Of a DNA stretch of 64,000 nt, positions 21,601 to 58,617 are shown piece by piece. Position numbers and translations under genes: made by a program. This stretch comes from Ophelia neglecta (taxonomy: Eukaryota). Location of the stretch: the NCBI GenBank assembly GCA_965285935.1, contig OZ260663.1, forward strand, positions 104,470,001-104,534,000, written 5' to 3'. Every line of letters begins with the position of its first letter. Positions within the stretch are counted from its first letter, which is position 1. Under the pieces are notes generated by a model. The model searched no databases. It saw nothing but the letters and a program-made list of their open reading frames with translations, and had not been told where the DNA came from.

Positions 21601-24600
21601 ATTAAAGCACTTTGTTTTAAACAGTTATATGTTTATTTGTGTTTTTGTAAACCTATGTACGAATTTACATAAAACCTTGTTTGTTTGGGTCAAACATGAA
21701 CGCCAACCTAGGTGTCGAGGTAAGTTGGTTTAAACATATGTATTTAGTTATGTTGGATGTTGCAAGAAACGTAGGGAATATAGAGTGTAATCTTCCACGG
21801 AGCCTAAGACTAAAACATTATATTTACAAGCATGCGATGAATGAAGGAAGAGCAAAAAGCACACAGTAAAGGAAATGGGAAACAATTTAGCATATCTTAG
21901 CCTAAAAAAAAATCACATAAAATGCATATTGACAATTAAAATTATGAGTCCAAAGGTAATAGCTAAGCAAACTGTCATTGAAGAAATAATGACGAGACCC
22001 TTCAGGAGACTACTTTCTGGACTAAATGTGAAATTCATTGAAGACACATTTATTCTTACCAAAAATGATATTTTTGGGTTGATGCGTAAAAATGACAAGA
22101 GAAGTGGCGGGGGAAGAACTTTCAGTATCACAAACGCAACTTGGTGTGGCAAAACAAAAGTTGAAAAAACGATAGTAAAGCCGGCAGCTACACGCCTGAA
22201 CTGAGCCTGAATGATATGGGTATATTGTATATTTACCTTTACAGTCTGGTAGCCGGAATCTGTCTGGACATTTACTACAACCTGTGTAGTCATCACAGGT
22301 ACTGGTCTCCGGACAGTCAGAGCAATCTACAAAGTTATCAAATCGGAACAGACGAGTTGGTATGACCTTAGTCAAGTAGCCACGACAGGAAAAGGAATAG
22401 AATTAAAGTCCCAAACGCGAGAGATGATCTCTTGTATATGTGTTAATTTATACTATGATTGAAAATATTATTTAATTAGACCATATAGAACTTTTCTCGA
22501 TGAGCGCGTCTCTTCCAAATATATTGCAGCATAATTAATTTCGATGCAATAAATAGGTATGATTTCTCTGGCTAACTCTGAAGAGAACAATATTGATAAT
22601 AATGAATGACATTATTTTATTTTTTGAAGAAAATGATCGACTATCCAGATTCAGTGATAAGATGACATATCGATTATTTTCTAGCAAAATAATTTGAATA
22701 AAAGGTGTTGACCCCTGGAGGGTATTTTCTTACTTATATATCTTCGCCCCATGACAACTACCTCGCACAGCTTGAAGCTGGTACTGTCGTATACTGCTAA
22801 CGCCACCTTACTCCCTATCATAGATGTCCCATTTTTACATGTTACTTCTGTGTACTGTGTATGGTTTTTGTTGGCGAGTGTACTTTGCATACAGATCTCA
22901 TTAGCTACTGGGTCTTCTGAGTTTTCAATGTAAGTATAAAGCCTTACATTTTGAGCTGCAAAAACAGAATCCTCCCAATCAATTCAAACCTCTTTCTTCC
23001 ATAGTTACCTTACTAGTCAAATAAATTCCTGCTTAGTGAACACAGGTTTACATATTTATTTCTGCCTTAACCGAATGGAGAAAAAAGAAATACCTTCATT
23101 GCCACCGTACACCAATACACGGGAAATTTTATAAAGATGTCCGAGTTCCACCATCCACCAAGGCTGAGCGTGTTCTCCTTTTATGTATGAACAGTGTTGC
23201 CTATCGTGGGTCTCGACCGCTACGCCATCTACTGCGAGGTCAGCAGTTCTATCTTTCCCATTTTGTAAACCACTTTGTTTGGCTGATTTACCAAGAGCAA
23301 CATTACCTGTTGAGGTTCGACCAGGTATTATGCTTTTATATATTGACACGCAATTTTAAACTTAAATTAAGTGTGCTGAAGTATTTACTGAAAACAGACA
23401 TTAATTTATAAACGTGAAATGAATCATCGGATTTTAAAATTAGTCTTTGCAATGAACCCAAACCCCACTTAGTAACTGCCTTATTAAATCACACAGACTT
23501 AGTATACAGGGTACTGATTTTGCCCTACAGTTAAAACGAGCATTCAGCCACTGGAATGCACGCCGAGAGATAGCCTACAAAACAGAAGGAGTATGTACGT
23601 CGAATATAACTGGAAAGAGAAAATCAAACCAAATCTGCATCCTGGACCGCTCCATGGTATGTCCCCCGGACTCCACCTCTCACACACCACCCCAGGACGA
23701 CAAGCGCCATTGTCATGATTACAGATGTCATCTTCACACCGACAAGGAAACGCACACGTTTTGTCGTCATGGCCGTATCGACATGAACCTATATAACATG
23801 TGATAAGCAGGAAATAGATTTATAATAAAAAACACATTTACTTCTCTCTGTGAAGATAGGGGGGCTTTTTTGTTAAATATGTTAGCATGAGGGAAAAATC
23901 AGATTGGTCAAATGACATATGGGTCAAGCCCAATTAATTTTCATATTGTCTTCCTTTTTTGTTTGTTTTATTACTTATCAGTTTGTTGTTTTTTTGTATT
24001 GTCGTGGTTTAGGGAGTAAGAAGGGGATTACCCAATTTATTGATTATTGTTACATGCTATATCGTAGTGGTATAGTTTTATCAGACAATATTAAAAATTT
24101 TAATTTAGTATGGCTTTCGTCCTTAATAACTTATGACAAATATGACATTATCTTAATGAATATCATGGTCAAACTATAATACGCATTACTATCCGCATAT
24201 GAAGTCCTTGCCAAAATTTACTGGACCAAGGAGGAGTATTTCATTTACTGGGTTTGTATGACCAGATGACATTCTCCGCTGCGGTTTAGCTTTCACAATT
24301 CACAAACATGGGATGAGATGGACTTGATAAGAAAAATGTCCACTACCTGTCCACGCCCTAAAAATAAACTAGCACTATTTTTCAATTTGGAACGCAGACA
24401 AATAAAAGTCTTCCATAGTACAAGCTGTGCGTTAATTGTCAATATAACACCAAATATATAGTTAAAAAAAATACATTCGGTCACTGTGACACCGCGACTA
24501 AATTATTTCCCATTTCCGCTGCCTATACTAACGTTCTTTAATGGCAAAACTAAACGCCAACTTAACATTGTAGTGAATATGGATTGTATTTCAATTGAAA

Positions 24601-25778
24601 TGGATTCATTTCAATGAATTTAATATTAACCCGTTAACACACGGTTTATCTCGAAAATATGTTATTTGCAGATTCGCAAATTGAAAATATAAAATCTTGC
24701 TGAACTACAAAAAAAGATAAAATTGATTGGTCGGAACATATGTACAATAGCAACACTTGAACATCCAGTTGTAAATATGTTGCGGTATTATGGGCAATTG
24801 AATTCCCCTAATTTTTTCCTGAAATAAAAGCACTTATCATTAATTCTCCGAGGAACAAGCTCTATTTTTTCAGGGACTAATTTAGCTAAACGACTATGGT
24901 ATTTACGCAGCAAGACGCAAGTTATTATAAAAGGATATATAGCAGGTGATAAATTGTCCAATTTTCATATCAAGTTATTTGAAGAGATCACTAATTCTGA
25001 ATATCGAATTATGTTTATTACTGTATAAGGACACAGCCAGAAACCAGCCGGATTACGTGTATTCGGGTCTAGTATCAGGTCCTAATTGGTATGAACCCTT
25101 AACAAGGAAATAGATATCTGACTGCATCTGACGCATCTGACTGTTAAACTATGCCGACAAAATGTTCAGCTGATGAAAGCAATATTATATTGAAGATGAA
25201 AATGAAGCAAGGGTCAGCGTATTTGGACGAAAAAAGAAATCTTTATTATAAACAGATATGGCATGCAAAAAGACAAGAATATTTATCGCTTGTGTAAGCT
25301 TCGTAACCAAACTGCCTTCACATTCATATTATAAAGCACCACTGTAGTGGAAAAGGGCATGCAACTAAGGCCAGCCCCTTTCGACAAATGTATTATTTGT
25401 AATTTAAATAGATTTATGAATAAGCTAAGAATTGGCATACACAATTCAGTTGATGTTTTTTTCTGACATTGAGCTGGATATCAATAATTATTGCGAGTTA
25501 TACTCAATGAAAACAATGAAGAGCAACTACTAAATATTATATATTTACTTAGTCCAGGCCTTAACACAATGGACAATATATAGGCCGTATTGAGTTTTTT
25601 TTAGATACTAGTCTGATATTCAAACCAACCATGGCTTACTTTCTGCGCGTTTAATACTTATTTAACATTTCAGAGTAAAAAGCTTAGAAAATGTGATTTC
25701 AACTTTACCTAGACCTTTAGCAACCGCCCAATGTAAAAGTACAACTAAGAGAGATATCTGTAGCATGGCCGCCATCAT
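12697..25778 (-). CDS. Gene A: receptor-type protein tyrosine phosphatase with SP, EGF-like, F-type lectin-like, EGF-like, FN3, TM, PTP D1 and D2 domains (~1164 aa, 26 exons)
   Basis: Phase-consistent GT-AG exons: 25709-25778 (signal MMAAMLQISLLVVLLHWAVAKGL), 23630-23788, 23094-23306 and 22734-22955 (NVALGK..AVDG..CS..WWMVELG..LCEV), 22237-22326, 20528-20677, 18761-18919, 18281-18628 (FN3, GLQPDTEYEF), 17907-18081 (TM), 17699-17796, 17317-17498, 17112-17199, 16791-16864 (DYINAN), 16622-16658, 16424-16521, 16098-16226 (QYWP), 15778-15923 (WPD..VHC), 15381-15516 (SAGIGRTG..MVQT), 14899-15039, 14337-14412, 14149-14216, 13869-14003, 13652-13783, 13365-13516, 13033-13168, 12697-12777 (stop). Confidence 0.88.
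19915..20240. mobile_element. Probable MITE-like insertion in an intron of gene A
   Basis: GC-richer block not found at the matching position of gene B; left GGAATGGGTCGAGAGTGTG is an imperfect inverted match to right TACACTCCGACCACTCCCTG. Confidence 0.35.
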
Positions 25779-26289
25779 TCCACAAAGTCACTTTGCTCCT
25801 CTGCAATACATAGTCACATGGCCTGTTAACTAAACACGCTCAACCCACGTTAGATGAGCTCGCTGTGTAAACAGCACAAGTCATCGCTCTATGATAGGGT
25901 ATCGTGTCCTTATCGATGCACTGTATGTTCACCCACTTATTAGAATTTACGACGTTCGGCTAGGCCGATCTCGAGCTGGTACTAGAATTAAACTAAGCAG
26001 ACGTTATGAGCTAATCACTAAGAGCGTTCTATACACAGTCAGTATTCTAACCACGTCATTAGAAGCAACAGAAAAATTAAGCTTGTATAATGTATTAATT
26101 ACTGAAGGTTATAAATATATATAAGAGTAAAAAGAATTCGTAATGCAATTGATTAAACATCAACATGTAGTTTCCTTTAGAGCATTTATTGGTTTTAATA
26201 GATTAACCATTTTTATTGTCAAACCTGATTTAAGCCTCCAATACAGCACATTGTAATACTGTTTTCTTTTCCCATGGTTAGTGAAATGA

Positions 26290-26676
26290 TCAAGTGTAGG
26301 ACTTGTATTTTCGCCATATCGCGAAGAAACGGTACTGCTTCTGTGAAGAAGAAACATGCATAATAGCTAAGGTCTTAGTTAATAATGGAAGATTTATCTT
26401 CTCAATGGTAATAGGACATACTTAATATTTGTGTGAGACTCTAAAACTGGAATGAATACCTGGCATATTTTTCTTAACAAATTCAATGTTTATACTAGAA
26501 CAATTATTCAAAACTGTAATTCGAGTTAATATTCATTTACCATGTTAACCTTGTTAACAAATTGCGGTTGCTTGCTTGACACACATCTAACAGCCAGAAA
26601 GACTTGCTGATCGGCTGTAATACTGTCTATCATGTAGTACGCAGCATAGAACTGACCGGACCGGGTGATTCCGTCT
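26290..26676 (-). pseudogene. Orphan last two exons of a further PTP D2 paralog (relic, or alternative terminal exons)
   Basis: 26541-26676 is a 136-bp AG/GT-bounded open exon, DGITRSGQFYAAYYMIDSITADQQVFLAVRCVSSKQPQFVNKVNM, homologous to 13033-13168; 26290-26340 starts KQYRF like the terminal exon MQYHFL. Confidence 0.75.
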
Positions 26677-26904
26677 CTACAGCACAGCAAAACTCATTGG
26701 TGGTAAAGAAGTATTTCTTTTGCAATTCGCTCTGGTAAATTCTAGCCATACTGCAACATTAATGTGTGTGTCTTGGATCTAGCCAAATACGAATTTGTCA
26801 TATACACCCAATAATTATATTTTACTATGTATGTCGGAGGAATTGAATCATCTACTTTTGTGGCTTGTTGATTGCTTTTGTTATTATGTTGGCATGTCAT
26901 TATT

Positions 26905-27070
26905 ATATTCCAGTCTAGGTAGCGCACGGTTGGGTCGTAGGTGTTATGCCAACGCAGCGGGACCAGTACACCGAGTGATATAGATGGGATAAACACTAAT
27001 ATGGTCAGACATACATTCCTGGCTGATGCAACATTGGCCGAACAGTGATAATTTAGAGGCCATATAACGG
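26905..27070 (-). pseudogene. GPCR pseudogene fragment (TM4-ECL2 region), paralog of the 4756-5796 gene
   Basis: FIPSISLGVLVPLRWHNTYDPTVRYLDWN aligns with FLPSIALGVVVPLLWHNSYDPTVCYLDWN; the rest of the gene is missing. Confidence 0.85.
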
Positions 27071-29042
27071 CTTGATTGGAGATCTAATAGTAAAACAGAA
27101 ATACCAAATGTACAACAATGAACAGAGTGCATGTACAGGAAACTCATAAACGATGAGTAATTCTACCATTACGACCTACAAGTATATCATTTAGAGTGGG
27201 TCAAAAAAACAACACTTTTTAAAAAGTTATGATCCCCGGGTGGTTAGGGTTTCCTTTTGGATAAAGTCTTATTTTTGTGGAGACAATTTGAAGGTCCCAC
27301 ACAGCCTCTTACTTCACGGAATTTAAATTGAACATTTATATTGTTTATTCTTTGTTTATTATGCTAACCAGAGGCTTGACTGAATGTGGTTTATATTGCT
27401 TAGTAAAGTGACATTTTCCACTGACTTAAGCTACAACGGAACATCTCCCATCTACTGGCGCTCATGAGTATTGAACTAACTGACTCTTGCCACTACATTT
27501 CTCTGTTTGCATTAGAATTATTATAGTTTTCCTCTAAGCTGTAACTGATTTTTATCATTCGAAGTAGAACCTATTTACTTTTTAATTGACTATTCTGGAT
27601 CAGATCTTCTGAAATACAGAATCCGGTGAGTTGCCATTCATTAAGTAATAGATATATACAATTCTACTAAATATCATCTTATATATCCTTCAAGGCATAC
27701 TGCAATCCATACAACTACCATAACCATCGACACGCCTGTACAATTGATACTCAGTGTCTTGAGTTGACATTATACATGGAGAAATATGTATGATATGTTT
27801 ATCATGAATTTTATTAGCAATACCAGCAACACAGAGGCGCCATGAACAAGAAAGATATAAGCCATAGATTCATTCCTATACGAAAACCGTTGTATATGTA
27901 TTGGAATCTATAAAGCTCATTAATGCTTAATTAACTCGCAATACACATCAATGGTATTGTAATATTTCTACCTATTTATGAATCATATAACTAGCTCGAA
28001 GAACATTCTAGTCGTTAGAAACTCTGGAATACCGGTTTACACCGCACAAAAAAACTAGTCCATTGTATGCCGTGAAGCCAATCCGTCCAATCACAGATAA
28101 TATATATTGACCAGTACATAAACTACAGTTATTCAAAAAATGTCACTTGGTGTAATTTGTATGTTCATCAAACACATATTTATCAAAAACAGGTAGTTTT
28201 CATTTGTAATAAATCAAATATAACAAATCATATTTGCATATAGTCACTGAGAGGGCCAGAAATACAAAATGAGTCTGTCTATGATAGCTGACACTTTAAT
28301 ACAATTTACACCTTAGCATATGAATATTACACGTATAACACAATAAGCTAAATAGATAGCAAAGTCTGTTTCTACGTGCACCTCCCGTTTACCAAATATG
28401 TTAACTAAATAGAAAGCAAACAGTTACTCCAACCATAGTATAAAACATACTATCCATGTGTATATATTCTGTATTCATTATACTGCATTTCAGAAAGAAC
28501 TAACATTAAATATTTCAAATGTATGTTTGGAAATATAAAGAATATACTTCTAAAAGATATAAGCCATAACTGTTTAAACATTTCACACAGGCATTTGGTT
28601 AAACATTTTTATTCGCTTAAAAGCTTGAAAATAAATCTAATTTTTATAACAAAAAGCTATAATATCTACCATATTGCATGTTTGAAAATAAGCTCGTTAA
28701 AACAAAAAGGTATAGGTAATACCAGGTGGACAATATACCCTTGTACAATCGTGCTTTTGCATGTCGATAATTTGTGTTATATACCTTACATTATTATACT
28801 ACTAACATCAGAGCATGCTTTCACTAAAAATTACATGACAACATGCACGGCACTGACCGCCAGGAGACGATGGTGTCCCATCTTATTATATATGTTTTAT
28901 ATTTGCTTAAACGCATCAATATTGTTCTACGTGTGTAATAGAAGTAAGCAAGTCTATACTTTTTATCAAATAAGTGATTTCTATGAAGGCGTAGCTCTCA
29001 AAAGAAAGAATTCAGTATAACGGTGATTTCTTTCAGTTATAA

Positions 29043-32000
29043 TCAAATAAGATCAAAGGATGTATATGGTGGTTTTGAGCATTGCGCCACATCGTACAGA
29101 AAATGGTATTGCATCTGAAAAAAAGGCAGGAAAATCCGCTCTTTTATCGTCAGTAACATGAAGAAGTCACATAGGAAATCCTAGGTAGTTTGCTTTACAG
29201 TAATGACTGGATATGATTTGTTTTAGTAGTTAAAGAGAGCGCATTCCGTTCCAACATTTCCTGATCGGCGGCTCTATTAATTCATTACTTTCATGCATAA
29301 CACTGCACCCAATATAATTGAATTAGACGCTATGAGATCATTATCATAAGTGTACTATTAATAGATACTTACCAATGTGTTGACGAATTCCGGTCTATTG
29401 GCCGAAACGCATCTCGCAGCCAGGAAAACATCTAACTCCTGATCTGCTTTCATTTTCTCCAGCATATAGTATGCAGCACAAAACAGACCTGACCGAGTGA
29501 TCCCGTCTCTAAAACGCATAGAATTTGTTTCTGTGCAGCTAGTCTAGGCAAAGTAACATTGTACTGCATTGCTTTCAATTTAAAGAAGTCGCACATTTCA
29601 CGTGCTTACTCTTCATGTTTTGATGAGAAATACTTAGACTACTAGTATTTAGTCTATCATTATTCTGTAAACAAAACCTCTCATGTTGTGCTAACTTACT
29701 CGCAATGCACAAGAATATTCCCACCGGTGCTATTGGCATAGCTCATCACAGTATCAATGAGATCAACTAGTGATCGTATGTTTGGCAGGTCTTGAACAGC
29801 CGGCCAATCCAACAGGTGGAAATGTGTGATGGTCCTCGGTTCTTCGTTGGTCTGGAAAGAAGAGTTGTATTAATTATACTAAATACATGTTTCTTGCTAC
29901 TTAATGCTGACTAAATGATATTGAACATATTTCAATATTAAGGGTTGCCCTATTTCAATGTATTCGGTATTATAACTAGACCGGGATGTTTTAAAATGCT
30001 AACAGTCGTTTTGAGTTAAATCATCAAATGTGTAGTAGTATATACTGTTTTCGTATTCTTTAGACTCAAGTCCCGCTTCACAAATGGTCCTATAGTATCT
30101 AGTGATATGCATTTAATCAAAAGATCTCCAAATCTTTGCTCTGGTTCATTGATTTCCGGCCAATATACTGTTTGGGTCTGGAATAGGAAATATCACAATT
30201 AAATAAATTATCTTTCATCGTACCTGTCTTCGTGGTAAAATAAACAAAGAATATAATATACCTCTACCGTATTGACAGGGGGATCGAGCATGACTATGGT
30301 CGTACGTCTGTATTGGTAAACAAGTCTCCAAAAGTCGTTCACTCTGTTGACAGGAGGGGTCCTTTTCGTGTATAAACCATTGTTAGTGTGGAAACTCTGC
30401 CAAAAATAACAGCGCCGTCGTTTAAGAACCATTAATTCATACTGGCATGACAGAAAGCCTCCAAAGCCAGGATTATCACTAATTAGTACTTGATTTTCAT
30501 CAACAGTTTATTTAATTTTCCTAAACTAGAAACATTCTTACATCGACAAACACGCCATTGATGCTTCTTTTGTCATGGACTTCGGACGATATCAGTGTGG
30601 GACTCGTATCTTCATGAAATTAGAATATGCAAATTAAATCAAACAGATTAAAAAGAAATCATTATAGACGTGTAACTATAGAATCACGGAACAGTGAAAC
30701 TCCTCCATCATTCCAACATACCAAAGTCAGTACCTGTCTCATGTTTAGGAAAACTATCCGCTTCTGCTCTTTGAACATCTTTCATCTGTTTCAAATGTTG
30801 TAAGACCTTTTATCGAATTAAACATATTTACATATAAAAAAGGAGACATACATAAAGCAAGTAGTAACTAATATTGCATTAAATATGTCCGTAACCATCA
30901 AGAACAGTGCCCTGTGAGCTCTCAAACATCGCTACCCAGTACTCTTGGATAAAACAAGACTAGGTGAATTTGTTTCGAAAATCCAAAGACCAAAGAAGGA
31001 GGGGTGTAATATATTCCCATAGTAGTGCATAGTAGGGTTCAGCTGATCAATGTGAGTGAAGTTTGACCAGTTTGTAAAAGATGGTGTTTTGGAATTTAAA
31101 TTTTATTACTGTAAGGTTTCCTGTTGAACTGCTATGAACATGTTTGATGGTAAATATGCTTTTATCTGGCAATAGAAACTTATAAAAGAACAGTTTTATC
31201 AGTTTCATCCGAAAGCATAATATAAAAATTCAAGACAATAAACATGGAGAATGTTAAGTTTTCATATACATTGAATTCACGATGGATTTGGCTAGTTGAC
31301 AAGGTTTGGTCCTCAGCAGTCATATCAGTCAGTCGTTGTTGGAGCTCACTAATGGGGATAGCGGTGTCACCCGTAGTGGCAACCTCCAGCATGGCGGTGT
31401 AGAGGAATATATACTGGTCCTGATAGGCATGAAGATTAAGAATAAAGTATTCGTATTTATCGAACAAGATTTAACATCGAAGCATTAAAAGCTGACATAG
31501 CACATTGCTAATTATTTGGGAACAATGATGAATGTTAGTAATATATATATAACTGTGAAAGCCAGAGCCGCATGTGGCACAGGCTGCACAGAACAGTCAA
31601 CTTTTTTCCAATTTTAGGTGGTTTCTTCGGTATATGGATCACTGCTTTTCTGTAGAGAGTGGGATAAAGTATGGGAGAGTGATCTCTTGGTGTTTTCCTA
31701 CGGATATTTTTCAAGTGATTGGAGCTTTTTAGTGTTTTCTGTCCATCACAGTGACTTTGTATATTTGTCAACATTGTACGCCAGATGCCATAATAGGGAG
31801 CTAATCACCCTTTCTACCAGACTGACATGTCTTACCCCTGTGCATGCTTGTTATTCGTTATGTGCTTGGGTACAGCTCAAGGAGGCGCACGCTTGGTGTA
31901 CTCCAGAGAACAGCTTGTGTCACTTAAGCCTGGAGGTGGGATCAGCGCTTTCTCACCAGTCACCCAGCCTGTCCAGTCAGTTATCAGAAGGAACAAGGCA

Positions 32001-35000
32001 GGGGTCAACGAACCAAAGCAGTGCCTCATTGACTCTGGGCCAGGTAAAATACCTACTCTGGTTAGTATACACAGGTGTCCACAACTACAGCCAACAAGAC
32101 CTCCCAGGTACTTAAAGGAAATTCCCCAGCTGCGGAATCCTGTAAACTGTGAAAAACTGACTTGCACTACCAATGGAACAGACTCAAATCTGTCTGTATG
32201 TGTTTTCAATGCAAGATCAGTAAAAAATAAAACAACTTTAATAAATGACCACATTGCTTCAAATGACCATGATATTATTGGTATTACTGAGACTTGGTTG
32301 CGTCCCGGGGACGCAGACACAGTGACTGTCGGAGACTTAGTTCCACCAGGTTATGATTTTCACCATCTGCCAAGGGAATCTGGATATGGTGGAGTCGGCA
32401 TTATCTTCAAGGAATCAATAAAATCAACAAAGGGTACTTTGCAAAGAAACAAAATTTTTGAAGCCATTGACATTGCATTGAAAACAGAAATACCCACACA
32501 TGTAATTGTGGTTTATAGACCTCCGCCCTCTGCCAGGAATAAGTTAACTGTATCACAATTTCTTGATGAATTTAGTGCATTCTTAGAAGTTAAAACATTA
32601 ATACAAGGACATTTGCTTATATTGGGTGACTTCAATTTTCATGTCACTGATAAATCAGATTCCTGTGCTCAGAGGTTTAATGATCTCATTCAGTCTTGTA
32701 ACTTGCAGCAGCATGTGTCAGAACCTACTCATGAAAGTGGCCATTGCCTGGATCTGGTGCTTACCAGAGCTGATCAAACATGTATTAGAGACCTCCATGT
32801 GGCATGTCCAATCTCGGACCATTTTGCAATTCACTGTAATGTATACTCTAGTAAGCCACAGAATGAAAAGTGTCAAATAAAATATAGAAGTTTCAAGGCT
32901 ATTGACATGGAGAAACTTACGGAAGATATTAGGTTGTCTCCCCTTGTCTCAAAATTGAGAGATACTCACGATACACCAGTACATATATTGGTTGACAGTT
33001 ATAACACTACACTCAGTGCCATTCTGGACAAGCATGCCCCTGTTAAGACAAAAGTTGTCACAAAAAGGGTTAAATCTCCTTGGTATTCTGATGATATTGC
33101 TCAGGCCAAGCGTTCTAGAAGGAAACTGGAACGCCTCTGGAGACGCACCAAACTGGTCGTACATCGGCAGATGTATCGGACTCAGTCAAATCTGGTGTGT
33201 GACATGATTGATTCTGCTAAACAGGAGCATTACACAAATAAAATTCAAGAAAATCCCGCAGATCAAAAAACCTTGTTTAAGGTTATTGATTCGCTCCTCC
33301 ATAAAGAGAAAGTATCTCCACTTCCAACTTGTAGCTCTAGTGAAACCCTTGCAGAGTCTTTCTCAAACTTTTTCTCTGAAAAAATTTCCAAAATTCAGAG
33401 TGGGCTTCAGATAGCCCGGAGGTCTTATCAGTCTCCATCATCAGAGGATAGTCTTTTCTCTGGTGAATCCCTGCAATGTTTTTCTCTAACGTCTCCTGAT
33501 GAACTGAGGAAAATCATCCTTAATGCTCCCCAGAAATCCTGCGAAGTTGACCCATTGCCAACTTGGTTGTTGAAGGAGTCGCTTGATGACCTTTTACCAG
33601 TTTTGACTCACATAATTAATCAGTCATTCAGGGCAGGTGTGGTCCCACATAAATTAAAAGAGGCTGTTGTTAGGCCATTGTTGAAAAAATCAAATCTTGA
33701 CAAAGAACAACTCGGTAACTTCCGGCCTGTTTCAAACCTATCATACTTGTCTAAGCTAGCGGAACGAGTTGTGGCAAATAGGTTGACCAGTCATTTGAGT
33801 GTCAACAATCTTGATGAACCATTTCAATCTGCCTACAAGAAAAATCATAGCATTGAGACAGCTTTAATACATGTCCAAGATGACATACTTTGTTCTCTCG
33901 ATGAGAAAAAGAGTGTTTTGCTCGTTCTTTTAGATTTATCTGCCGCTTTCGATACGGTGAGTCATTCTACATTGTTAAATCGGTTACAAAATAGGATAGG
34001 TATTGGAGGCGTTGCCCTGAAGTGGTTTGAGTCGTATCTGAGCGACAGAACACAAAGTGTCAATATAGATGCATACTCATCTAAACCTCGTTTGTTAGCA
34101 TGTGGGGTGCCACAGGGAAGTGTTTTAGGCCCCCTTTTATTTTCAATTTACACGCTCCCACTTGGCGATATAATGAGGACCCACCAGGTATTATATCACC
34201 TGTACGCTGACGACACTCAGCTTTATGCTGCCTTTCACCCCAATCACCTCGGTCAGGTTCGTACAAATCTCGAGCAGTGTCTTGATCACGTCAGGTGCTG
34301 GATGGCGCACAACCTCCTCAAGCTGAACGATACCAAGACGGAGTTCTTGATTATCAAGCCAAAAAGAATAGCCTGTGAGGTTCCAGAGACTATCCGCGTC
34401 GGTGAATCCACTATCGTTGCCTCTCCATCAGCCCGCAACATTGGTGCAGTTTTCTCAAATGACTGCTCACTGGATTCCCATATTAACAAAGTGTGTAGAA
34501 ATGCATTTTTACACTTGCGAAATATCTCAAAAATTAAGAGATACCTATCCAAAGAGGCACTTTTAACAATCACTCATGCCTTTATTACATCAAAGCTTGA
34601 TTCATTAAATGCTTTGTACACCGGGCTGCCCGAATCTCAGATAGCAAAACTTCAACGGGTACAAAATGCGGCTGCCCGAATGATAACAGGCTCATCTTAC
34701 AGGTCTCACGTAACTCCCCTTCTGAGAGACCTGCATTGGCTTCCTGTAAAACAGCGTATAGAGTACAAGATATACCTGTTAACATACAAGTGCCTTCACG
34801 GTCAGGCACCGGGCTACTTGTCTTCCCTGATTTCTAGATACTGTCCTGCACGAAGTCTCAGGTCCAGTAGTCATTTTAATCTTGATTTGCCACGCGTCAG
34901 GACTACTACCTATGGTCACAGACGCTTTTCATATGCTGCTCCAATGTTATGGAATCAGCTGCCTGTCAACGTTAAGCTTGCTGACACATTGACTGATTTT

Positions 35001-38000
35001 AAGAAAAAATTGAAAACTCACCTGTTTAAACTTGCATTTCAATTATAAGTCAACTCTTATTTTATAAGTTACTTACCTCTTATTCTTGTAAACTTCTTTT
35101 AATGATTCTAGTCGTTTTTAGTATTATCAGAAACTATTTTATTGTTTCTACCACTGATTGTACAGCGCCCTTGATCAAGTTTTTAAACCTGGAAATGGCG
35201 CTTTATCAAATGTATATAATAATAATAATAATAATAATAATATATATATTCAATCAGGAATAATGTTAATAGTCTATTCAGTATTGGTAGCCAGGCTTCT
35301 GTCTTATCAGTAATTTTAAACATCACAGTAGGTTAACATGGATAAAGGCAAGGATGAGCTCTTTAGTATTTAAAAACAGCATTATATTAATTAACATTAA
35401 TTAAAGCTTAATCAAGGGATTACGATTTTTATAACCCATGGGCCAACCGAACTTTAATCGTTTACCAATGTTTGAACCATCTTCATCCTTTCGCGTCTCA
35501 TTTGACAGACAAAGGTGAAGACATTGATTTGAGACTCGGCCTTTGCCTGCTGCATCAGATAGTCCAGGGCGATAAACGTCCCTGTTCTCCCTATGCCAGC
35601 GCTATAAGTTTAAACATTTTGTGCAGAATGAAAGGGTTTATATATTCGGCAAACAATAAGCTATTTGTCTAATTGTATCATTGCCTAATTGCATCTTCCG
35701 GCCTGGTATTTATAGAAACACACACAATGCAAATATCCCTCCGCTGTACTAACAGTGAATTACCAAAGCACCATTATAAATTATTTTGTACCTGCAGTGG
35801 ACTATTATAGGCCCTGCACTGGCCCTGTCAAATGACCTGACCTTTCTCCGAAAGGCGAGCAGGGCGTGGGCGTGCTTCGGGGTCGATTTGTCCGGCCATC
35901 TTAAGAACTGCAGATGTCGGACAACTCTTGTGTCGTTCTTACCGTTCAAATTATAAATGATATATACAGATTAATAAAGATATTTGTAATTAATTATCTT
36001 GTGCCTACACGCATTAGGTATGTCAAACAATGAAAGTGAGTAAATGCCATATACTGAGTCGTATTTATCAATAATTAGGAACCAAAGTGTAAAACATATA
36101 TCCCTGACCCCTCTAGTGATATTCAGCACACAAAATGTGTAGTCAGCTAGGGTTTCTCTTCTTACAGTTTCGACCAAAATTTCATTGTAGCTGTGTTCTG
36201 TACCAACATCCTCCGGCCAGTATTGTTCACTCTTTCTCTAGAAAAGTCTTCATATTTTTATTGAGGTCGGGCATGACAGTATATACGTATATTGTGATTT
36301 GAGTACGAGGTTCCAACAAGCAGTTGATAGGACATTGACGGGGCAATATATTATATCTTACTATCAATATATATCGCTTAGCATGGAGTCAAAACTAAAT
36401 TAAACATAATAATTGTTGTTCTTCATATTCATGTATACCCTTCCGTTTTCAAATGCTCTTGTAAGCATAACTATCCTGTTAGCCTCAAGTTGCCATATCA
36501 TTGCCCAGAACTCGCCCGTGGTGTGCTTTGTGGGTGCTGACATGAGAAATTATAAAATCAAGCGTTAAATTTATAGACCGTCTGCAACACGAAAGTATAA
36601 GCATAGAAATAACTAAACAAATATAAAATAATATACCTTGTGTGGCGACATATGCTCTATTCGCGTCATATCCCTGAAAACCAAAATTAACCGAACAAGA
36701 TGGAGAGCGAATAGTTTGTGGTATAAGGTTATGTCTTTGAACTTTGCAAAACCGACCTATTTATTGTTATTAAACACATCATAATGAGTTACATTTCACA
36801 CATACCGTAATGAAGTTGGCGTTAATGTAGTCAGAAGCTTCTTTTATGTTTTTAATAAGAACAACGCGAGTGGAATCATCTGAAAATATGCCGAATATGA
36901 CTGCAAACCTCGAGATTAATTTGAATGACCGTTTTTCATTTTAAACCATTGCATTGCTAGCTTGAATTGTAATTTCACGAGATTCGTTATTGTTAAACTG
37001 TTGACGCCACTTTGCCGGTGTTTGGTAATTTTAGATCGAATTAATGGCCTATTTTGTTCATGATTTTTGAGGGGTCTGCCGGTTACCAGTCCTGTTTTTT
37101 TCACTCACAAGCTCGGATATTTGTAAACCTATTTCTCAACTTATTCTCAGGCAGGCTAGCAGCAATACAATCTAGCATTTCTGTACTTGGTATCGCCTGT
37201 AAGAAAGCGAACACTATATAACCTTAATGTTATTTATATATAATGTCTTCGAGTTCGATAATAAACACAGAAATAAAATGCATGCCCTCTATCACAAATG
37301 TATTGACATACGTTGAATTCTTCGCTGAATCCATTGTCAACCTTCCCCTTGTTAACATACGACTGGAGCTTGGATAGTTTTATAATTGTACGTTCCAACA
37401 CAACGGGTGTATTGACATTGGCATAAATAACATCATCTGTTCCTTCACCGTTTCTTGGAACCATTACAGCTTTGTTATTTCTGTCTTCAACATCATTATC
37501 CCGTGGCATTTCTATTGCAAATGACATTTTAGTATTTTCTGATGGGCTTGTTAGGATTTCTGGAGCCAGAAATTATGCAGTCATTATAGATATGCAACCG
37601 TCATCTACAGATACTGTATGTCGAATTGTCCCTAGCGAAAATGATGACAGTATTTGTTCAATCTGGGACTTGATGTTAACGGAGAAAAACACGAAAGGTT
37701 ATTTTAAAACATCTGGTCAGTGGGTATATTGATTTACCTGAGGTAGCCTGCGACGTAGATTGGTTGGTCAAGATAGTTCCAGCCATCACAGAAAGAGTGT
37801 GTTCCGGGATGTTGTCTTTACGTGAGGTTCTGTTTCTGTCGGATATGAAGCACATCATATTGTGTGTGCAGACATAAACATTATATTATCGAAGTCAATT
37901 GGGAATGTCATTATATTCAAGTCTATGCTGTAATTATCACAATACCTGTTGAGGAGCAAGAAGATTCCGATGCCTACAAGTATAACCACTAACACGGAAA

Positions 38001-41000
38001 GACTTATAACCAGGACGGTCTTCCAACTAGATGAAGAATCTAATATCGTTGCAGACTCTATTGTAGGAATTTCTGCTGTGCCTTCTCGCAACGCAGTAGT
38101 AGGCGACAACGATGTTAGACCTATTCATTGAAATATATATAAACCATAATATAGTGTAAAGGTTCTGTGAATAATTGTTATTCAACTTTGGTTTTCAGTT
38201 TGGTAATTTACAGGCTAATCTTTTATGTGTGGGATTTGATACAAAGATCATAGGTATTAACTGTTTAGTGCAAACAAACCTAGATAAACCTCTGGTGTTA
38301 TCCCTTAATTTAGCATGTAAACTGTGGGCCGTACAATATTTTACCTGTCGTTCGAGCCTTCGATACATCCATGTCTAATCGGTTGTTCGATTTCAGATCC
38401 ATAAAAAGCAGACTACCATCCTTCGTCCAGAATACCCTCCAGTCAAACTCGTACTCCGTGTCTGGTTGTAGTCCGCTCACGGTTACCTGCCATTCCCCCT
38501 GTCCCTGTGAGACGTCGTCATACTTTGTCCAGTTTGTAAAACCCAGTGGTCTGTAGTATATCCTAAATCCCACATGTTTAGTAATCTGTTGTGTGGAATA
38601 GAAAGCTGCCACCCAGGTCCATGTTACAGAGTAAGTTGTGGCCTCCGCAAGGGTTCTGTTCCAGAGGTCATTGGATTCTCTTGCGTTTATGACTAAAATC
38701 CAAAGTACGTTCTGTTGGTTTCAGGCACGGTAGCGGCAAAAACCTGCTGATTTATGTAATTTATCAGATAGCCGGCGTAGATTTAAGAAAAAGGACTGCA
38801 CTCACGTATGTCTATGTCACACCATCCTCCCGTCCTCCAGAGTATGAAAATCGGGGTCCTTATATTATTACACCCGTCTGTACACTCTCCCGTCTCCTTC
38901 ACACAGTAATGGTTACGACAATGGATACTGCAACAGTTCTTTCCAATCGTCTCTTGAGCACATTCTGAGTGAAAGATATTCCTTCTATCAATATATATAT
39001 TTCTTTTCCACCAAAAGACAATAAAGTGTATAGTATATCGCCTGTTTTGACGAATCGGGGACCTACTATTCAATGCAACCCATCAACTAGATTTATTTAT
39101 TTATTATAAACTTTAAGACGCGGAAGCTACTGACTGTGATACTGTTAACCAGCCTCTAAAGAGCAACACTATAGTAAACTATGATGATTATGATTCTAAA
39201 GTATCTAATTTTATATGATAAATCCCATTGGCCTCTTAGCTGTTGTTCCACGGCTATTATGATATACAGGCTCTGGTAAACACAATGCCTCTATATATAG
39301 GCCCATGCATTTTTCAGCTTAGGCTTAGGTATTAATAAACTTTAATTAGGTAATAATACACTTGCTATTCTAATAAAACAGCCTGCGGTTGTCGTTGATT
39401 AGGGTTGTCAATATTGGAGAAAAATAGAACAATGGTAACATGTGGTGACAAGATAAGAGTGGTCATGTGTGGAAAAGTCATGAGGTGCCATGCAAAACGG
39501 GTCCAATATGTAGTACAAATACCCATATTTACCTATACAGTCGGGGGTCCTGAATCTATCTGGACATTTACTACAACCTTGGTATTGGTCACAGGTGCTG
39601 TTCGGCGCACATAGAGAACAATCTACAAGTAGATATATATGTAAAGAAATAGATAACCGCAATGTATAGATACAATTAGAAACTATAATGCGCACTATGG
39701 CACGGGTTACCTGTGAAGGAATAACACATGTGAGTCTATTTGGTTGAGTTCGAAAGTGTGGTACTGATACGAGTCAGTTCAAATCACTCTTATTGCTGAT
39801 TAAAAACCTCCTTTTGTTAACCGAAGGTAATAGGGCATTATTCCTATCAGATTGCCAAACCAGCAGGTAAAGAAAGCTGATCACACTGACTTCATTACAC
39901 ATGACAAAATGCGGACTCACCCTGAATCAAATCGTTTATAGAACGACAAACAGCGTTTTCATATGATCACAGCCATTTCATTCCATATTTATGAACAGCA
40001 TACACTCAAATTTTCCGCCAGGGGCGGTGTCGAAAAGTTTATTATAAATTCCATCGATCTTTAGTCACCTGAATACAGAGCAACGGTTTGTGAGCTTGTG
40101 TTTTACTTACCCACTCGGAAATCACATTTCTTTCCAATCCACTTTATACCTTTCTTTCCAATAGCACACCCTTCAGTACACACCCCTGTCTCTCTCACAC
40201 ATGACTGGTTTAGACAACGGGGACTGCAGCAATTCACACCCAACGTCCCTGCGGCGCATTCTGAAAAATAGTAGAAACAAACGCAGAATATTGTTGCATT
40301 TCTTTTTTTAACCAAGGAATGAAATATTGTTTCCACATCATAACTGCACTTTCATTATTATTTCATTATTGTTCGGAGAAAATAGCCCGCAGATAATTCG
40401 CTACTAAGAAAATTACTTATAGTATTACCATGGCTGTACATGTAGTATTTAGCCTCCATTTGAATAAACTTTTCCCAAGATAAAACACACAGATAACGTA
40501 TTACTTTATAACCCACCCTCCCCTTAAAAGAATAGTAATGAAACGTGACTTTAAGAACAACAGTTATATGTTAATCATATTAATTCCTTTTTTTATTAGT
40601 AGCCGAATATTTCTGAACTGCATATAGTGCATATATTGAGCCAAGTGAAAGATCCCGCAATCTAAACACTGATGTTTTACGCCAGGCACATACTACTGTC
40701 AACAAAGGAGCATTACGTACACTTGCATAATCCTCTATCTATACATATATAAGATATTGAATGTAGATTTGTATGGCTACCTTCGAACCCAACTTGGCGC
40801 ACAGACGAGACATAAACATTTATTTGTGATGCTTAAAAAGAATGCATTACCATTACAGAATAGTTATTCATTGAGCCATATTTGTATTGATACATTTAGC
40901 AACTAATTTGTGTATTAGCTCCAAAGCCAGCTGCCCTTAAACTTTAAAAAGTGTTGTCAGCAGCACGACCTATTCTTAGAATTGCTCCTTTTATTTTTAT

Positions 41001-44000
41001 TGTTCTCCGCACGACTTCAGACTGTTTAAATGAAAAATGTCTCAGCGACTTGTAAAAACATTCAATATCTTTTCCGATATCCTTGCCTCGGTTTTAAACT
41101 TTTATATGTTTATTAATGTTTTTCGTTGTTATTGTAAACTAACGTAGGATTGCACACAAAAACCCTGTATGTTTGGATCGAAATTGAATGCCAACCTAGG
41201 TGTCTTTGTAAATTGGTTTAAACATATGTATTGAGTTATATTGGATTTTGAAAGAAACGCAGTGAATATAGAATGTAATCTTCCACGGATCATAAGACTA
41301 AAACATTATATCTACAAGCATGCGATGAATGAAGGTAGAGACAAAAACACACAGTTAAGTAAAGGGGAATCAATTTAGCATATTCTAGCTACACAAAAAT
41401 CATATAAAATACATATAGACTATTAAAAGCCCCCCAAAAATGAGTGCAAATGTAATAGGTAAGCAAACTATCTTTGAAGAAATAATGATGAGGCCCGTCA
41501 GGAGATAACTTTGCTGGACTAGAATGGAAGTTCTTTGAAGACACCTATATTGATACCAAAAATGATTTTCACCATCAGAAATGCAACTAGTGTGGAAAAA
41601 CTAAAGTTAAAAAAGACAATAGTTAAGCTGGTTCAGGTTTGAACTTAGCCCGAATGATATGGGTATATTGTTTATTTACCTTTACAGTCTGGTAGCCGGA
41701 ATCTGTCGGGACATTTACTACAACCTGTGTAGTCATCACAGGTACTGGTCTCCGGACAGTCAGAGCAATCTACAAAGATATCAAATCAAAACAGACGAGT
41801 TGGTATGACCTAAGTCAAATAGCCACGACAGGAAAAGGATGAGTATTAAAGTTACAAACGCTTGAATAGAGGAGAGGTGCTCTCCTATCGCCATTTATAT
41901 ATGCGTTAAATAATAGTATGATTGAAAATTGTTGTCCAATTAGACATTATAGATCTGCTGTCGATGAGCGCACCTCTTCTAGACATATTGCGGAATAATT
42001 AATGTGGATGCAAATAAAAAGGAATGATTGCTCTGGCCAATTCTCAAGAAAAAAAGTGATGATAACATCTGACATTATTTGGTTATGTGAAGTAAACGAT
42101 CCATATTAAATGATAAGATATCGAATCGATCATTTGCTAACGAAATAATGTTTATGAAAGGTGTTGAACCTTGCGGGCTTTTTTATTTACCTACATATCT
42201 TCGCCCCATGACAACCACCTCGCACAGCGTGAAACTGGCACGGTAATATACTGCTATCAACACCTTACTTCCTATCATATGTGTCCAATTTTCACATGTT
42301 ACTGCTGTATACTGTGTATGGTTATTGGTGGTGAGGGTACTTAACCCACAGTAGCCATTATCCGTCGGGTCGTCTGAGTTTATAATGTATGGATGGAGCT
42401 TTACATTTTTAGCTGCAAAACCAGAATCATCCGAATCAATCCAAACCTCTTTTTTTCATAAATACTTTACTGGTCAAATAAGTTCCTACTGAGTGAACAC
42501 AGGTTTACATATTTATTCTTGCCATACTCAATGGACGAAAAATACCTTCATTACCACCGTACACCACTACACGGGAAATTCTATAAAGATGTCCAAGTTC
42601 CACCATCCACCAAAGCGGGTCGTGTTTTCCTGTTATGTATGAGCAGTGTTCTCTATTGTGGTTCTCAATGGCTACTCCATCCACTGCGCGGTTAGCAGGT
42701 CTCTTTTTAAGATTATGAAAACCACTTTGTCTGGCTGATTTACCAAGTGCAACATTACCTGTTGAGGTTCGACCAGGTATTATGCTTTTGTTTATTGACA
42801 CCCAATACTAAAACTAAATTAAGCGGGTTGAAGTATTTATTGTAAGCAGACATTAATTTAAAAAGTGACATGACTCAGCGGATGTTGAATTTAGACTCTG
42901 CAAGAACCCAAACCCCACTTTGTTACTGGAAGGCAAAGAATAATAATAATCATCAGTTAAAACGAGCATTCAACCACTGGAATGCACGCCGAGAGGCAGC
43001 GTTCGTAATAGGATGTCTATGTACGTCTAATAAAACTGGAAAGAGAACACCAAACCATATCTGCATCCTGGACCGCTCCATGGTATGTCCCCCGGACTCC
43101 ACCTCTCACACTCCACCCCAGGACGACAAGCGCCAGTATCATGATTACAAATGTCATCTTCACACCGACAAGGAAACGCACACTTTTTGTCGTCGTTGCC
43201 GTATCGACATGAACCTATATAATACGTGATAAGCCGGAAATGGATTCATGTTTAAGGTACGCATTTACATCTATTTTCCGTTACAAGCGCAATTACATTT
43301 GGGAAGCTGGGGTTTGAGATTTTTGGGCCTGCAGCTGAATGTGATGATTTCAGAGCCAATTAACGGACTGTTCATTGCTTTGTCTGCCGGGTATCTATTA
43401 CCGCTATTTAAAACTACCAACGCTCCTTACCAAGTTATCGACGGAACCAGCCTACAGCTAGTCTAGCATACTGACTTTGGAGAGAACATGTATCTACATA
43501 CTGCTACTTGTTACGACATTAATCGGACATGATTGAATCAATAAGAACAACTAATAGCAAACTAATGTGTTTGCTACAGACACATTAGATGTAATTGTGG
43601 TGAAAATTACTAAACCGTAGACTTATAGTGATAGCTGTTAGAGTGGGCCATCTTGGTTCCTAGTATAAACATGAAACATGTGCCAAAAAGCAGACGAAAG
43701 CAAAATTATGCAATTTCAACCTAAAGCGAAAACAAACTAGAACATGTCGTATATATATATACCATATTATTTGAACTTTCTTGTCTCTGACAACGAAGAT
43801 AATTACTCATAATTAAATCAGGAGCAAAAGAATTTCATACACTATTTCAATGTTGATCCAGGCTCCAATTTGTCACGAGCACTGCGGCATTTGCTCTCTT
43901 CAAAAAAACATTCTCTAGTGCAGTAAAAATAGTTACTAGAGTATATACACTCTTTATAAGCCTTTATATGGTCAATCATCTGTCAGTCACTTTTATTATT

Positions 44001-58615: not shown

Positions 58616-58617
58616 CA

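What the first reader, a model, noticed from the sequence alone, without database searches (positions are those of the whole stretch)
22734..42758. Lectin domain is hypervariable between A and B while adjacent exons are nearly invariant
Hand alignment: lectin exon 1 differs at 19/71 aa (23094-23306 vs 42546-42758) and lectin exon 2 at 26/74 aa (22734-22955 vs 42191-42412), many radical (G/L, D/K, G/W, D/Y) and clustered between conserved framework motifs. The next EGF exon (CSDCPETSTCDDYTGCSKCPDRFRLPDCK) and D1 exons such as APTKHTTGEFWAMIWQ... are identical in protein. Inference: diversifying selection on the ligand-binding surface.
Basis: partly seen in the sequence, partly recalled or inferred. 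Interest (0 to 1): 0.78.

Follow-up and report, generated by a model that had tools for sequence, protein, structure and literature searches.

The report
Variable lectin head, homogenised phosphatase tail
Two neighbouring receptor phosphatase genes do differ most in their lectin-like head, but mainly because that end of the gene is an old, unhomogenised lineage with loosely constrained loops; only about a sixth of its codons show signs of positive selection.

Summary
On the minus strand, copies A and B differ at 19/70 and 26/73 codons of the two lectin exons, while the next EGF exon and several phosphatase D1 exons are identical.

The selection reading is only partly supported. For A versus B, dN/dS is 0.48 and 0.74.

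A and B belong to a cluster of at least 24 paralogues. The 5' head module (EGF, lectin, EGF) keeps old lineages: about 81% identity to most copies, and 94% to one twin 550 kb away. The FN3, transmembrane and phosphatase module is about 90% identical to every copy, introns included. Recombination among copies is significant.

Family-wide codon models still favour a class of about 17% of lectin codons with omega 2.3-3.5 (p = 3e-4 to 6e-6). D1 exons show no such signal, but the FN3 exon does. The AAA-equivalent CDR1-3 loops evolve at omega of about 1. Selected sites lie at both ends of the inferred barrel.

The domain lacks the fucose-binding triad. Earlier scan notes describe this same receptor family elsewhere in the genome.

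The parts
12700..25778 (-). Gene A. Order of parts: signal peptide, EGF-like, F-type-lectin-like domain (2 exons), EGF, two laminin-EGF-like exons, FN3, TM, PTP D1, PTP D2.
   Evidence: Open frames, conserved AG/GT sites and phases. Pfam fn3 and Y_phosphatase hits on individual exons.
23094..23306 (-). A, lectin exon 1. It encodes the N-terminal half of the domain: the CDR1-3 equivalents and the calcium-site motif.
   Evidence: PDB sequence hits to FBP32 (3cqo), AAA (1k12) and Sm-hPAF. Pfam F5_F8_type_C(_2) matches are below the cut-off, as expected for a half domain.
22734..22955 (-). A, lectin exon 2. It encodes the C-terminal half: the end of CDR4, both Cys of the second disulfide, and the CDR5 equivalent.
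   Evidence: The exon-2 profile matches second halves of F-lectin domains (P0143 and others) that align with AAA over their full length. The exon alone has no PDB sequence hit.
23630..23788 (-). A, upstream EGF-like exon (5/52 aa different from B).
   Evidence: Family-wide M0 omega is 0.24.
22237..22396 (-). A, downstream EGF exon (22237-22326) plus 70 nt of upstream intron. This patch is only 3.8% diverged from B.
   Evidence: Max-chi-square breakpoint at about 22396, p < 0.002. Family-wide omega is 0.10.
29036..45120 (-). Gene B. Same architecture as A, plus one extra EGF exon (39537-39620) and a LINE in one intron.
   Evidence: MAFFT alignment of A and B, and tblastn of A's exons.
42546..42758 (-). 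B, lectin exon 1.
42191..42412 (-). B, lectin exon 2.
41680..41769 (-). B, downstream EGF exon (protein identical to A).
52854..53425 (-). Copy C, lectin exons 1 (53213-53425) and 2 (52854-53078). They are 66% and about 60% identical to A at the protein level.
   Evidence: dS to A or B is 0.5-0.85, with omega 0.3-0.64.
12700..18919 (-). A, 3' module (laminin-EGF 2, FN3, TM, D1, D2), introns included. It is about 90% identical to many paralogues, and no closer to A's twin than to the others.
   Evidence: 400-bp nearest-neighbour scan and medians.
19100..23900 (-). A, 5' head module. It is 92-97% identical to a single twin copy (C5:103.94 Mb) and about 81% to all other copies, B included.

Best explanation
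**What A and B are.** They are two members of a clustered family of at least 24 type-I membrane receptor tyrosine phosphatases. Each carries an EGF / F-type-lectin-like / EGF head.

**Why they contrast so sharply.** The genes are evolutionary mosaics.
- The head module (upstream EGF-like exon to the first laminin-EGF exon, introns included) preserves old paralogue lineages. A and B are about 18-20% diverged at neutral sites there, and each has a much closer twin in an inverted duplicate of the array.
- The FN3, TM and phosphatase module has been repeatedly exchanged among copies (gene conversion or unequal crossing-over). It is about 90% identical to every copy, introns included.

**Constraint inside the head.**
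- The small EGF exons are strongly constrained (omega 0.10-0.24). One of them also lies in a short homogenised tract.
- The lectin framework is constrained (omega about 0.15-0.3). This covers the strands, the calcium-site motif and two disulfides.
- The lectin loops are free to change (omega about 1).
- Roughly a sixth of lectin codons change faster than neutral (omega 2.3-3.5).

**Shown and inferred.**
- Shown: the mosaic structure, the recombination signal, and the omega values from my own codon-model code.
- Inferred: that the fast codons reflect selection for new ligand specificities. The same kind of signal in the FN3 exon suggests it concerns the ectodomain as a whole.
For: **Divergence and selection between A and B**
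- Exon-by-exon Nei-Gojobori values for A versus B.
- Intron K against exon dS and dN for 18 paralogue pairs.

**Family and mosaic structure**
- At least 24 clustered copies. A's lectin exon 1 is 90% identical to copies 200-550 kb away, but only 73% to B.
- The upstream-EGF-to-downstream-EGF stretch of A is 93.5% identical to locus L004, against 81% to B.
- Nearest-neighbour scan. Head module: median 80.9% to non-twin copies, 94.4% to the twin. 3' module: 90.6% to non-twin copies, 90.4% to the twin, 90.2% to B.
- PHI test across the head region: 0 of 2000 permutations reached the observed value.
- Significant max-chi-square breakpoints in introns for several pairs.

**Codon models**
- M0 omega per exon.
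- M1a against M2a for the lectin exons: p = 2.6e-4 (all copies) and 5.8e-6 (subset). D1 (p = 0.80) and TM plus juxtamembrane (p = 0.32) are negative controls.
- Framework omega 0.32 against CDR omega 0.96 in lectin exon 1.
- Nine independent recent pairs: lectin pN 0.036, pS 0.045, intron 0.055; EGF pN 0.021.
Against: - The codon models are my own implementation, with branch lengths fixed from M0. Paralogue gene conversion can inflate M2a tests. PHI inside the lectin exons alone is not significant (p = 0.35), but its power there is low.
- Lectin exon 2 omega (1.30) is not significantly above 1 (p = 0.21).
- Recent pairs show lectin pN significantly below intron divergence (p = 5e-5). Any positive selection is therefore confined to few sites or is episodic.
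- No RNA evidence was available. No 3-D model of the joined domain could be made. No orthologues or population sample were analysed.
Confidence: 0.7

Rival explanations
1. Pure diversifying selection on the sugar-binding face. The lectin is hypervariable because new ligand specificities are favoured, and the neighbouring exons are conserved only by purifying selection.
For: - M2a is preferred over M1a.
- 13 of the 19 exon-1 differences fall in the CDR1-3 equivalents.
- Lectin exon 2 has the highest omega in the gene, 1.30.
- In-frame indels sit in loops.
Against: - A/B omega is 0.48 and 0.74, with dS equal to flanking-intron K.
- CDR1-3 omega is 0.96, indistinguishable from 1.
- Neutral divergence itself differs about two-fold between the head and tail modules.
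- High-posterior sites include the loop around the Cys108-equivalent and the turn after the Cys124-equivalent. By AAA numbering these lie at the barrel bottom (PMC5712786).
- The FN3 exon shows the same kind of signal.
- No variant was seen in A's lectin exons in another sample's contigs, against about 32 in 2.5 kb of flanking non-exon sequence.
Confidence: 0.15
2. Relaxed constraint only. The lectin loops are unconstrained surface, many copies are redundant or decaying, and the M2a signal is an artefact of gene conversion among paralogues.
For: - Loop omega is about 1.
- A/B omega is about 1 in the FN3, TM, juxtamembrane and several D2 exons.
- Some copies are broken: a 1-nt deletion in lectin exon 1 of L020 (B's twin), a frameshift in the upstream EGF-like exon of L006, and no downstream EGF exon in L013.
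- Recombination is pervasive in the region.
Against: - The lectin exons are open and their splice sites intact in 23 of 24 copies.
- The framework, both disulfides and the calcium-site motif are invariant.
- The controls run with the same pipeline (D1, TM) show no M2a signal.
- The signal strengthens in the shallower subset, where saturation is lower.
Confidence: 0.15

Closest known systems
Oyster sperm bindin F-lectin repeats (Crassostrea gigas), as summarised in PMC5712786
   Same: An F-type lectin domain diversified among repeats or isoforms. Positive selection acts at a minority of sites, and recombination in introns shuffles variants. Some isoforms lack the His-Arg-Arg triad.
   Different: - Bindin is a secreted acrosomal protein from few genes, with allelic hyper-polymorphism and alternative splicing. 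Here the domain heads at least 24 clustered receptor phosphatase genes, and no allelic excess was seen.
- The eight selected bindin sites cluster on the fucose pocket. Here the sites lie at both ends of the inferred barrel.
Eel fucolectins (AAA, eFL-1 to 7) and striped bass FBP32
   Same: The same domain family by sequence. Variation and indels concentrate in the CDR loops, CDR1 and CDR2 especially (PMC5712786).
   Different: - The eel lectins keep His52 and the CDR4 Arg-x-Asp-Cys-Cys...Arg motif strictly.
- All 24 copies here have Tyr at the His52 position and Gly at the Arg79 position, have no Cys-Cys pair, and have a CDR4 three residues shorter.
- So fucose binding is not expected.
Clustered vertebrate immune receptor families (KIR, LILR, Ly49) and other birth-and-death receptor clusters (my own knowledge, not tested here)
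   Same: Tandem multigene clusters with a variable ligand-binding ectodomain and a conserved signalling part, mosaic exchange among paralogues, and short-tail relatives nearby (copy C; earlier scan notes).
   Different: Different domains (lectin, EGF and FN3 instead of Ig or C-type lectin). The phosphatase is built into the receptor rather than recruited. No expression or functional data exist.
Classical tandem-domain receptor protein tyrosine phosphatases (LAR/PTPRF-like)
   Same: A single TM segment. D1 has WPD and HC(X5)R motifs, followed by a second, degenerate D2 domain. FN3 is present in the ectodomain.
   Different: - The head is lectin and EGF, not Ig.
- None of the 150 best library matches to lectin exon 1 also matched the phosphatase exons.
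- The amphioxus protein named PTPRF (P0084) has the lectin domain but no Pfam phosphatase domain.

Membership tests
F-type lectin domain (AAA / FBP32 type) | Sequence similarity to solved F-lectin domains across the domain | tested here: met
   - Exon 1: FBP32 E = 2.7e-5, AAA E = 4.5e-3, Sm-hPAF E = 3.6e-3.
- Exon 2: its profile matches second halves of multi-FTLD proteins (E = 1e-5 to 1e-7). One of these (P0143) aligns with AAA residues 8-153.
- Pfam F5_F8_type_C(_2) scores fall below the gathering cut-off for the half-domain.
- The fold itself was not modelled, because joining the two exons was left out.
F-type lectin domain (AAA / FBP32 type) | Fucose-binding motif His-X24-Arg-X-Asp-X4-Arg/Lys with adjacent Cys-Cys (PMC5712786) | tested here: not met
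   - His52 is Tyr in all 24 copies, and also in six distant paralogues.
- The Arg79 position is Gly.
- There is no Cys-Cys pair, and CDR4 is three residues shorter.
- The candidate Arg86 position is variable: R, K, T, M, N or G.
F-type lectin domain (AAA / FBP32 type) | Cation-binding motif h2DGx and the two disulfides Cys50-Cys146 and Cys108-Cys124 | tested here: met
   - A-V-D-G is present in 20 of 24 copies; the rest vary by one residue (VVDG, AVDS, AEDG). The x position is V, I or S rather than N, D or S.
- Cys is present at all four equivalent positions in 23 of 24 copies. L018 lacks the Cys124 equivalent.
Classical receptor-type protein tyrosine phosphatase | Y_phosphatase domain with a WPD loop and an HC(X5)R active site; tandem D1-D2; one TM segment | tested here: met
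   - Pfam Y_phosphatase on D1 exons (E = 2e-3 to 1.5e-13) and D2 exons.
- WPD and VHC-S-AGIGRTG can be read across the exon junction.
- A hydrophobic TM exon is present.
- The D2 signature Arg is Trp in A and Arg in B.
Recognition domains under diversifying selection (oyster bindin type) | A codon class with omega above 1 supported by a likelihood-ratio test | tested here: met
   - M2a against M1a: p = 2.6e-4 for 24 copies and 5.8e-6 for the subset; D1 and TM controls are negative.
- Caveats: home-made implementation, and paralogue recombination.
Recognition domains under diversifying selection (oyster bindin type) | Selected sites clustered on the ligand-binding face | tested here: inconclusive
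   - Exon-1 sites fall in or next to the CDR2 and CDR3 equivalents.
- Exon-2 sites fall in CDR4 and CDR5, but also around the Cys108-equivalent and near the Gly95-equivalent turn, which I infer to be the barrel bottom.
- No coordinates were available to measure this.
Recognition domains under diversifying selection (oyster bindin type) | Excess allelic polymorphism in the domain | tested here: not met
   - Contigs of one other DNA sample show 0 variants in 435 bp of A's lectin exons, against about 32 in 2.47 kb of non-exon sequence.
- This is one sample only. Contigs drop rare variants, and alleles more than 3% divergent were excluded.

The most novel reading that the evidence does not exclude
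The cluster is a germline-encoded repertoire of recognition receptors. It combines lectin-headed phosphatases with short-tail partners such as copy C. Old head lineages are kept and reshuffled by gene conversion, and positive selection acts on ectodomain loops. The signalling module is kept uniform by concerted evolution. This would be an invertebrate counterpart of paired immune or allorecognition receptor families, built on a fucose-blind F-lectin fold.
Probability: 0.25. Interest if true: 0.75.

Novelty: new variant of a known kind. Interest (0 to 1): 0.5.

Why it matters
If the heads of the different lineages bind different ligands, this would be a large, undescribed invertebrate receptor repertoire. 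A variable lectin-like sensor would be wired directly to a tyrosine phosphatase. The division of labour would be clear: the recognition module diversifies while the signalling module is homogenised.

There is also a methodological point. A striking contrast between a 'hypervariable' exon and 'invariant' exons in tandem paralogues can come mostly from mosaic gene conversion. It needs intron and synonymous controls before selection is invoked.

Tried and rejected
- **First translations.** The cause was phase-1 exons on the minus strand.
- **Exon 2 against solved structures.** Lectin exon 2, alone and as a 20-sequence profile, gave only spurious PDB hits. I bridged it to AAA through library protein P0143 instead.
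- **Contiguous template.** I looked for a contiguous copy of the whole lectin domain to fold. The 208-aa open frame in L013 turned out to be the upstream EGF-like exon, a shortened intron and lectin exon 1, not the two lectin exons.
- **Large representative search.** Searching with exon 1 found nothing above 45% identity, and no hit that combines the lectin and phosphatase exons.
- **Amphioxus 'PTPRF'.** P0084 looked like a precedent for the architecture but has no Pfam phosphatase domain.
- **RNA evidence.** None: only DNA-type runs from one sample hold this stretch.
- **Literature.** Searches for lectin-headed phosphatases found nothing specific.
Full report
**1. Observation**

The four exons are phase 1, which is why straight translation gave stops. 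I aligned A (about 11.0-26.2 kb) with B (27.5-45.6 kb) and read conserved AG/GT sites and phases. This gave a 23-exon model of A, with every exon matched in B.

The order of parts is: signal peptide, EGF-like exon, lectin domain in two exons, EGF exon, two laminin-EGF-like exons, FN3, TM, juxtamembrane, phosphatase D1, phosphatase D2. Pfam confirms fn3 and Y_phosphatase on single exons.

Between A and B the lectin exons differ at 19/70 and 26/73 codons. The downstream EGF exon differs at 0/29, the upstream EGF-like exon at 5/52, and D1 exons E11 and E14 at none. The excess over the EGF exons is significant (p = 4.6e-6).

**2. What the domain is**

Lectin exon 1 matches solved F-type lectins: FBP32, AAA and Sm-hPAF. 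The AAA alignment places our residues as follows:
- 12-19 on CDR1
- 24-27 (A-V-D-G) on the cation motif
- 29-36 on CDR2
- 41-48 on CDR3

Of the 19 A/B differences in exon 1, 13 lie in those 24 codons (p = 5e-4).

Exon 2 has no PDB hit of its own. Its profile does match the second halves of multi-FTLD proteins from the large library search. One of these, P0143, aligns with AAA residues 8-153. That bridge gives these equivalences:
- our Cys21 = Cys108
- Cys39 = Cys124
- Gly47 = Gly130
- Cys63 = Cys146
- CDR5 = our residues 55-59
- CDR4 is three residues shorter than in AAA

The fucose triad is absent in all 24 copies: His52 is Tyr, the Arg79 position is Gly, and there is no Cys-Cys pair. The domain therefore has the F-lectin framework, but it should not be assumed to bind fucose.

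**3.

Nei-Gojobori estimates for A versus B are below.

| Region | dS or K | dN | omega |
|---|---|---|---|
| Lectin exon 1 | 0.289 | 0.140 | 0.48 |
| Lectin exon 2 | 0.293 | 0.219 | 0.74 |
| Three flanking introns | 0.17, 0.20, 0.24 | | |
| Two EGF exons | 0.10, 0.06 | | |

Synonymous and intron divergence around the lectin exons are therefore equally high, and dN does not exceed them.

A max-chi-square scan puts a breakpoint about 70 nt upstream of the downstream EGF exon. Divergence is 17.1% to its left and 3.8% to its right (p < 0.002). That exon's identity thus reflects a short homogenised tract as well as strong constraint.

Between A and B, omega is about 1 in the FN3, TM, juxtamembrane and several D2 exons. 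The lectin does not stand out by omega in this pair; it stands out by the depth of its divergence.

**4. The family and its mosaic structure**

The window is C5:104.47-104.534 Mb of a 762-Mb genome. Lectin exon 1 of A has at least 24 close paralogues within 103.83-105.06 Mb, and hundreds of distant ones elsewhere.
- A's exon 1 is 90% identical to copies 200-550 kb away, but only 73% to B.
- The upstream-EGF-to-downstream-EGF stretch of A is 93.5% identical to locus L004, against 81% to B.
- B has a near-identical twin (L020), and C has twins too (L021-L024).
- The gene order is C-type, B-type ... A-type, and it is mirrored on the other strand. This indicates an inverted segmental duplication of an array that was already diversified.

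A 400-bp nearest-neighbour scan of gene A against 20 other copies shows two regimes.

| Module of A | Median identity to non-twin copies | To the twin | To B |
|---|---|---|---|
| Head (23.9-19.1 kb) | 80.9% | 94.4% | 82.1% |
| FN3 exon onward | 90.6% | 90.4% | 90.2% |

In the 3' module, introns included, the twin relationship has vanished and the family is star-like. I read this as repeated exchange among copies. The PHI test across the head region is significant (0/2000 permutations). Several pairs show sharp breakpoints in the introns on either side of lectin exon 2. One example is L009/L016, with 13 differences in 1195 bp against 66 in 339 bp.

**5. Family-level selection tests**

I wrote a Goldman-Yang type codon likelihood: F3x4 frequencies, a separate tree for each exon, and branch lengths from M0.

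M0 omega by exon:

| Exon | Omega |
|---|---|
| EGF exons | 0.24, 0.10 |
| Lectin exon 1 | 0.53 (0.66 in the phosphatase-gene subset) |
| Lectin exon 2 | 0.89 (1.30 in the subset; not significantly above 1, p = 0.21) |
| First laminin-EGF exon | 0.36 |
| Second laminin-EGF exon | 0.77 |
| FN3 | 0.57 |
| TM | 0.86 |
| D1 exons | mostly 0.10-0.33 |

M1a against M2a:

| Data set | 2dlnL | p | omega2 | Share of codons |
|---|---|---|---|---|
| Lectin exons jointly, all copies | 16.5 | 2.6e-4 | 2.3 | 18% |
| Lectin exons jointly, subset | 24.1 | 5.8e-6 | 3.5 | 17% |
| D1 exons (control) | 0.46 | n.s. | | |
| TM plus juxtamembrane (control) | 2.3 | n.s. | | |
| FN3 | 17.3 | 1.8e-4 | | |
| Laminin-EGF exons | 9.5 | 0.009 | | |

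Further checks:
- With an a-priori partition of exon 1, the CDR1-3 codons have omega 0.96 (not different from 1) and the framework has 0.32.
- In nine phylogenetically independent recent pairs, lectin pN is 0.036, pS is 0.045 and intron divergence is 0.055. Lectin pN is significantly below the intron value. EGF pN is 0.021.
- PHI within the lectin exons alone is not significant, so intra-exon recombination is not an obvious cause of the M2a result. Power for that test is low.

**6. Where the fast sites lie**

High-posterior codons in the subset analysis:
- Exon 1: 29 and 35 (CDR2), 46 and 47 (CDR3), 51 and 64 (strands).
- Exon 2: 4 (CDR4), 56 (CDR5), 51 (strand), and 10, 16, 19, 22, 23.

By AAA numbering, the last five surround the Gly95-equivalent turn and the Cys108-equivalent. 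[quoted passage not shown] It also describes Asp64, Pro106 and Arg131 as strictly conserved across structures whose core and barrel bottom are very similar, with the top loops varying. From this I infer that the loop around Cys108 is at the bottom, next to where the two EGF modules attach.

This inference rests on sequence equivalence and the alternation of strands. No coordinates were available to me.

**7. Other evidence**

Only DNA-type runs from one sample hold this stretch, and there is no RNA. Their contigs, laid at 97% identity or more, show about 32 substitutions in 2.47 kb of non-exon sequence and none in the 435 bp of A's lectin exons. This is weak evidence against allelic hypervariability of a given copy.

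Literature searches found no description of lectin-headed phosphatases. The 150 best library matches to exon 1 include no protein that also matches the phosphatase exons. P0084, named PTPRF in amphioxus, has the lectin domain but no Pfam phosphatase domain.

Earlier notes of this scan describe the same very large family elsewhere in this genome, with phosphatase or short tyrosine-motif tails. I did not test the tail claim. I did see that copy C has only the head exons, followed by a Ser/Thr-rich stalk and a TM exon.

**8. Verdict**

The sharp A/B contrast is mainly a product of three things: modular mosaic evolution (an old head lineage against a homogenised tail), a short conversion tract over the EGF exon, and unequal constraint.

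A real but modest signal of positive selection exists at about a sixth of lectin codons. It is shared with the FN3 exon and is not confined to the canonical sugar-binding face.

The closest described precedent is the diversification of F-lectin repeats in oyster bindin. The receptor-phosphatase context, and the split between a diversifying module and a homogenised module, make this a new variant of that known kind.

Noticed in passing
window 31549-35223 (ORF 31827-35048, + strand): The 3.7-kb insertion in B's intron between the last two D1 exons (E17 and E18) is a non-LTR retrotransposon. It has an intact 1073-aa ORF (endonuclease plus reverse transcriptase), runs antisense to B, and is absent from A.
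   Followed up: partly
window 50359-50730 (minus strand): Copy C, and its twins L031, L039, L044 and L045, have only the head exons (upstream EGF-like exon through the first laminin-EGF exon). In the window, C's head is followed by an exon encoding a Ser/Thr-rich stalk and a TM segment. I found no FN3 or phosphatase exons. C therefore looks like a short-tail, membrane-anchored relative of the phosphatases. Its tail exons were not searched for.
   Followed up: partly
window 39537-39620 (minus strand): B, and most other paralogues, carry an extra EGF exon (75% identical to the downstream EGF exon) between the two laminin-EGF-like exons. A, L038 and L041 lack it. A and B do not align across this interval (A 19.1-20.1 kb).
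   Followed up: partly
window 26547-26675 (minus strand): An isolated relic of a D2 phosphatase exon (60% identical to A's) lies between the 3' end of B and the 5' end of A.
   Followed up: no
window 18281-18628 / 38345-38692: The FN3 exon is itself mosaic between A and B. Its first roughly 120 nt are about 79% identical, with 14 of the 17 aa changes. The remaining roughly 228 nt are about 97% identical, including a stretch of about 180 bp with 2 differences.
   Followed up: partly
L020 (C5:103.84 Mb), L006 (C5:103.92 Mb), L013 (C5:104.63 Mb): Some family members are damaged. B's twin L020 has a 1-nt deletion in lectin exon 1. L006 has a frameshift in the upstream EGF-like exon. L013 has a shortened intron after the upstream EGF-like exon, and no downstream EGF exon at the expected place.
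   Followed up: no
window 46600-47545 and 57799-58616: Two tandem-repeat arrays. One has a period of about 49 or 97 bp at 75-91% identity, in the interval downstream of C. The other has a 273-bp period at 95-98% identity.
   Followed up: no
window 13033-13168 / 29373-29508: In the D2 domain's active-site signature, the Arg position is Trp in A and Arg in B. The Cys is kept in both.
   Followed up: no
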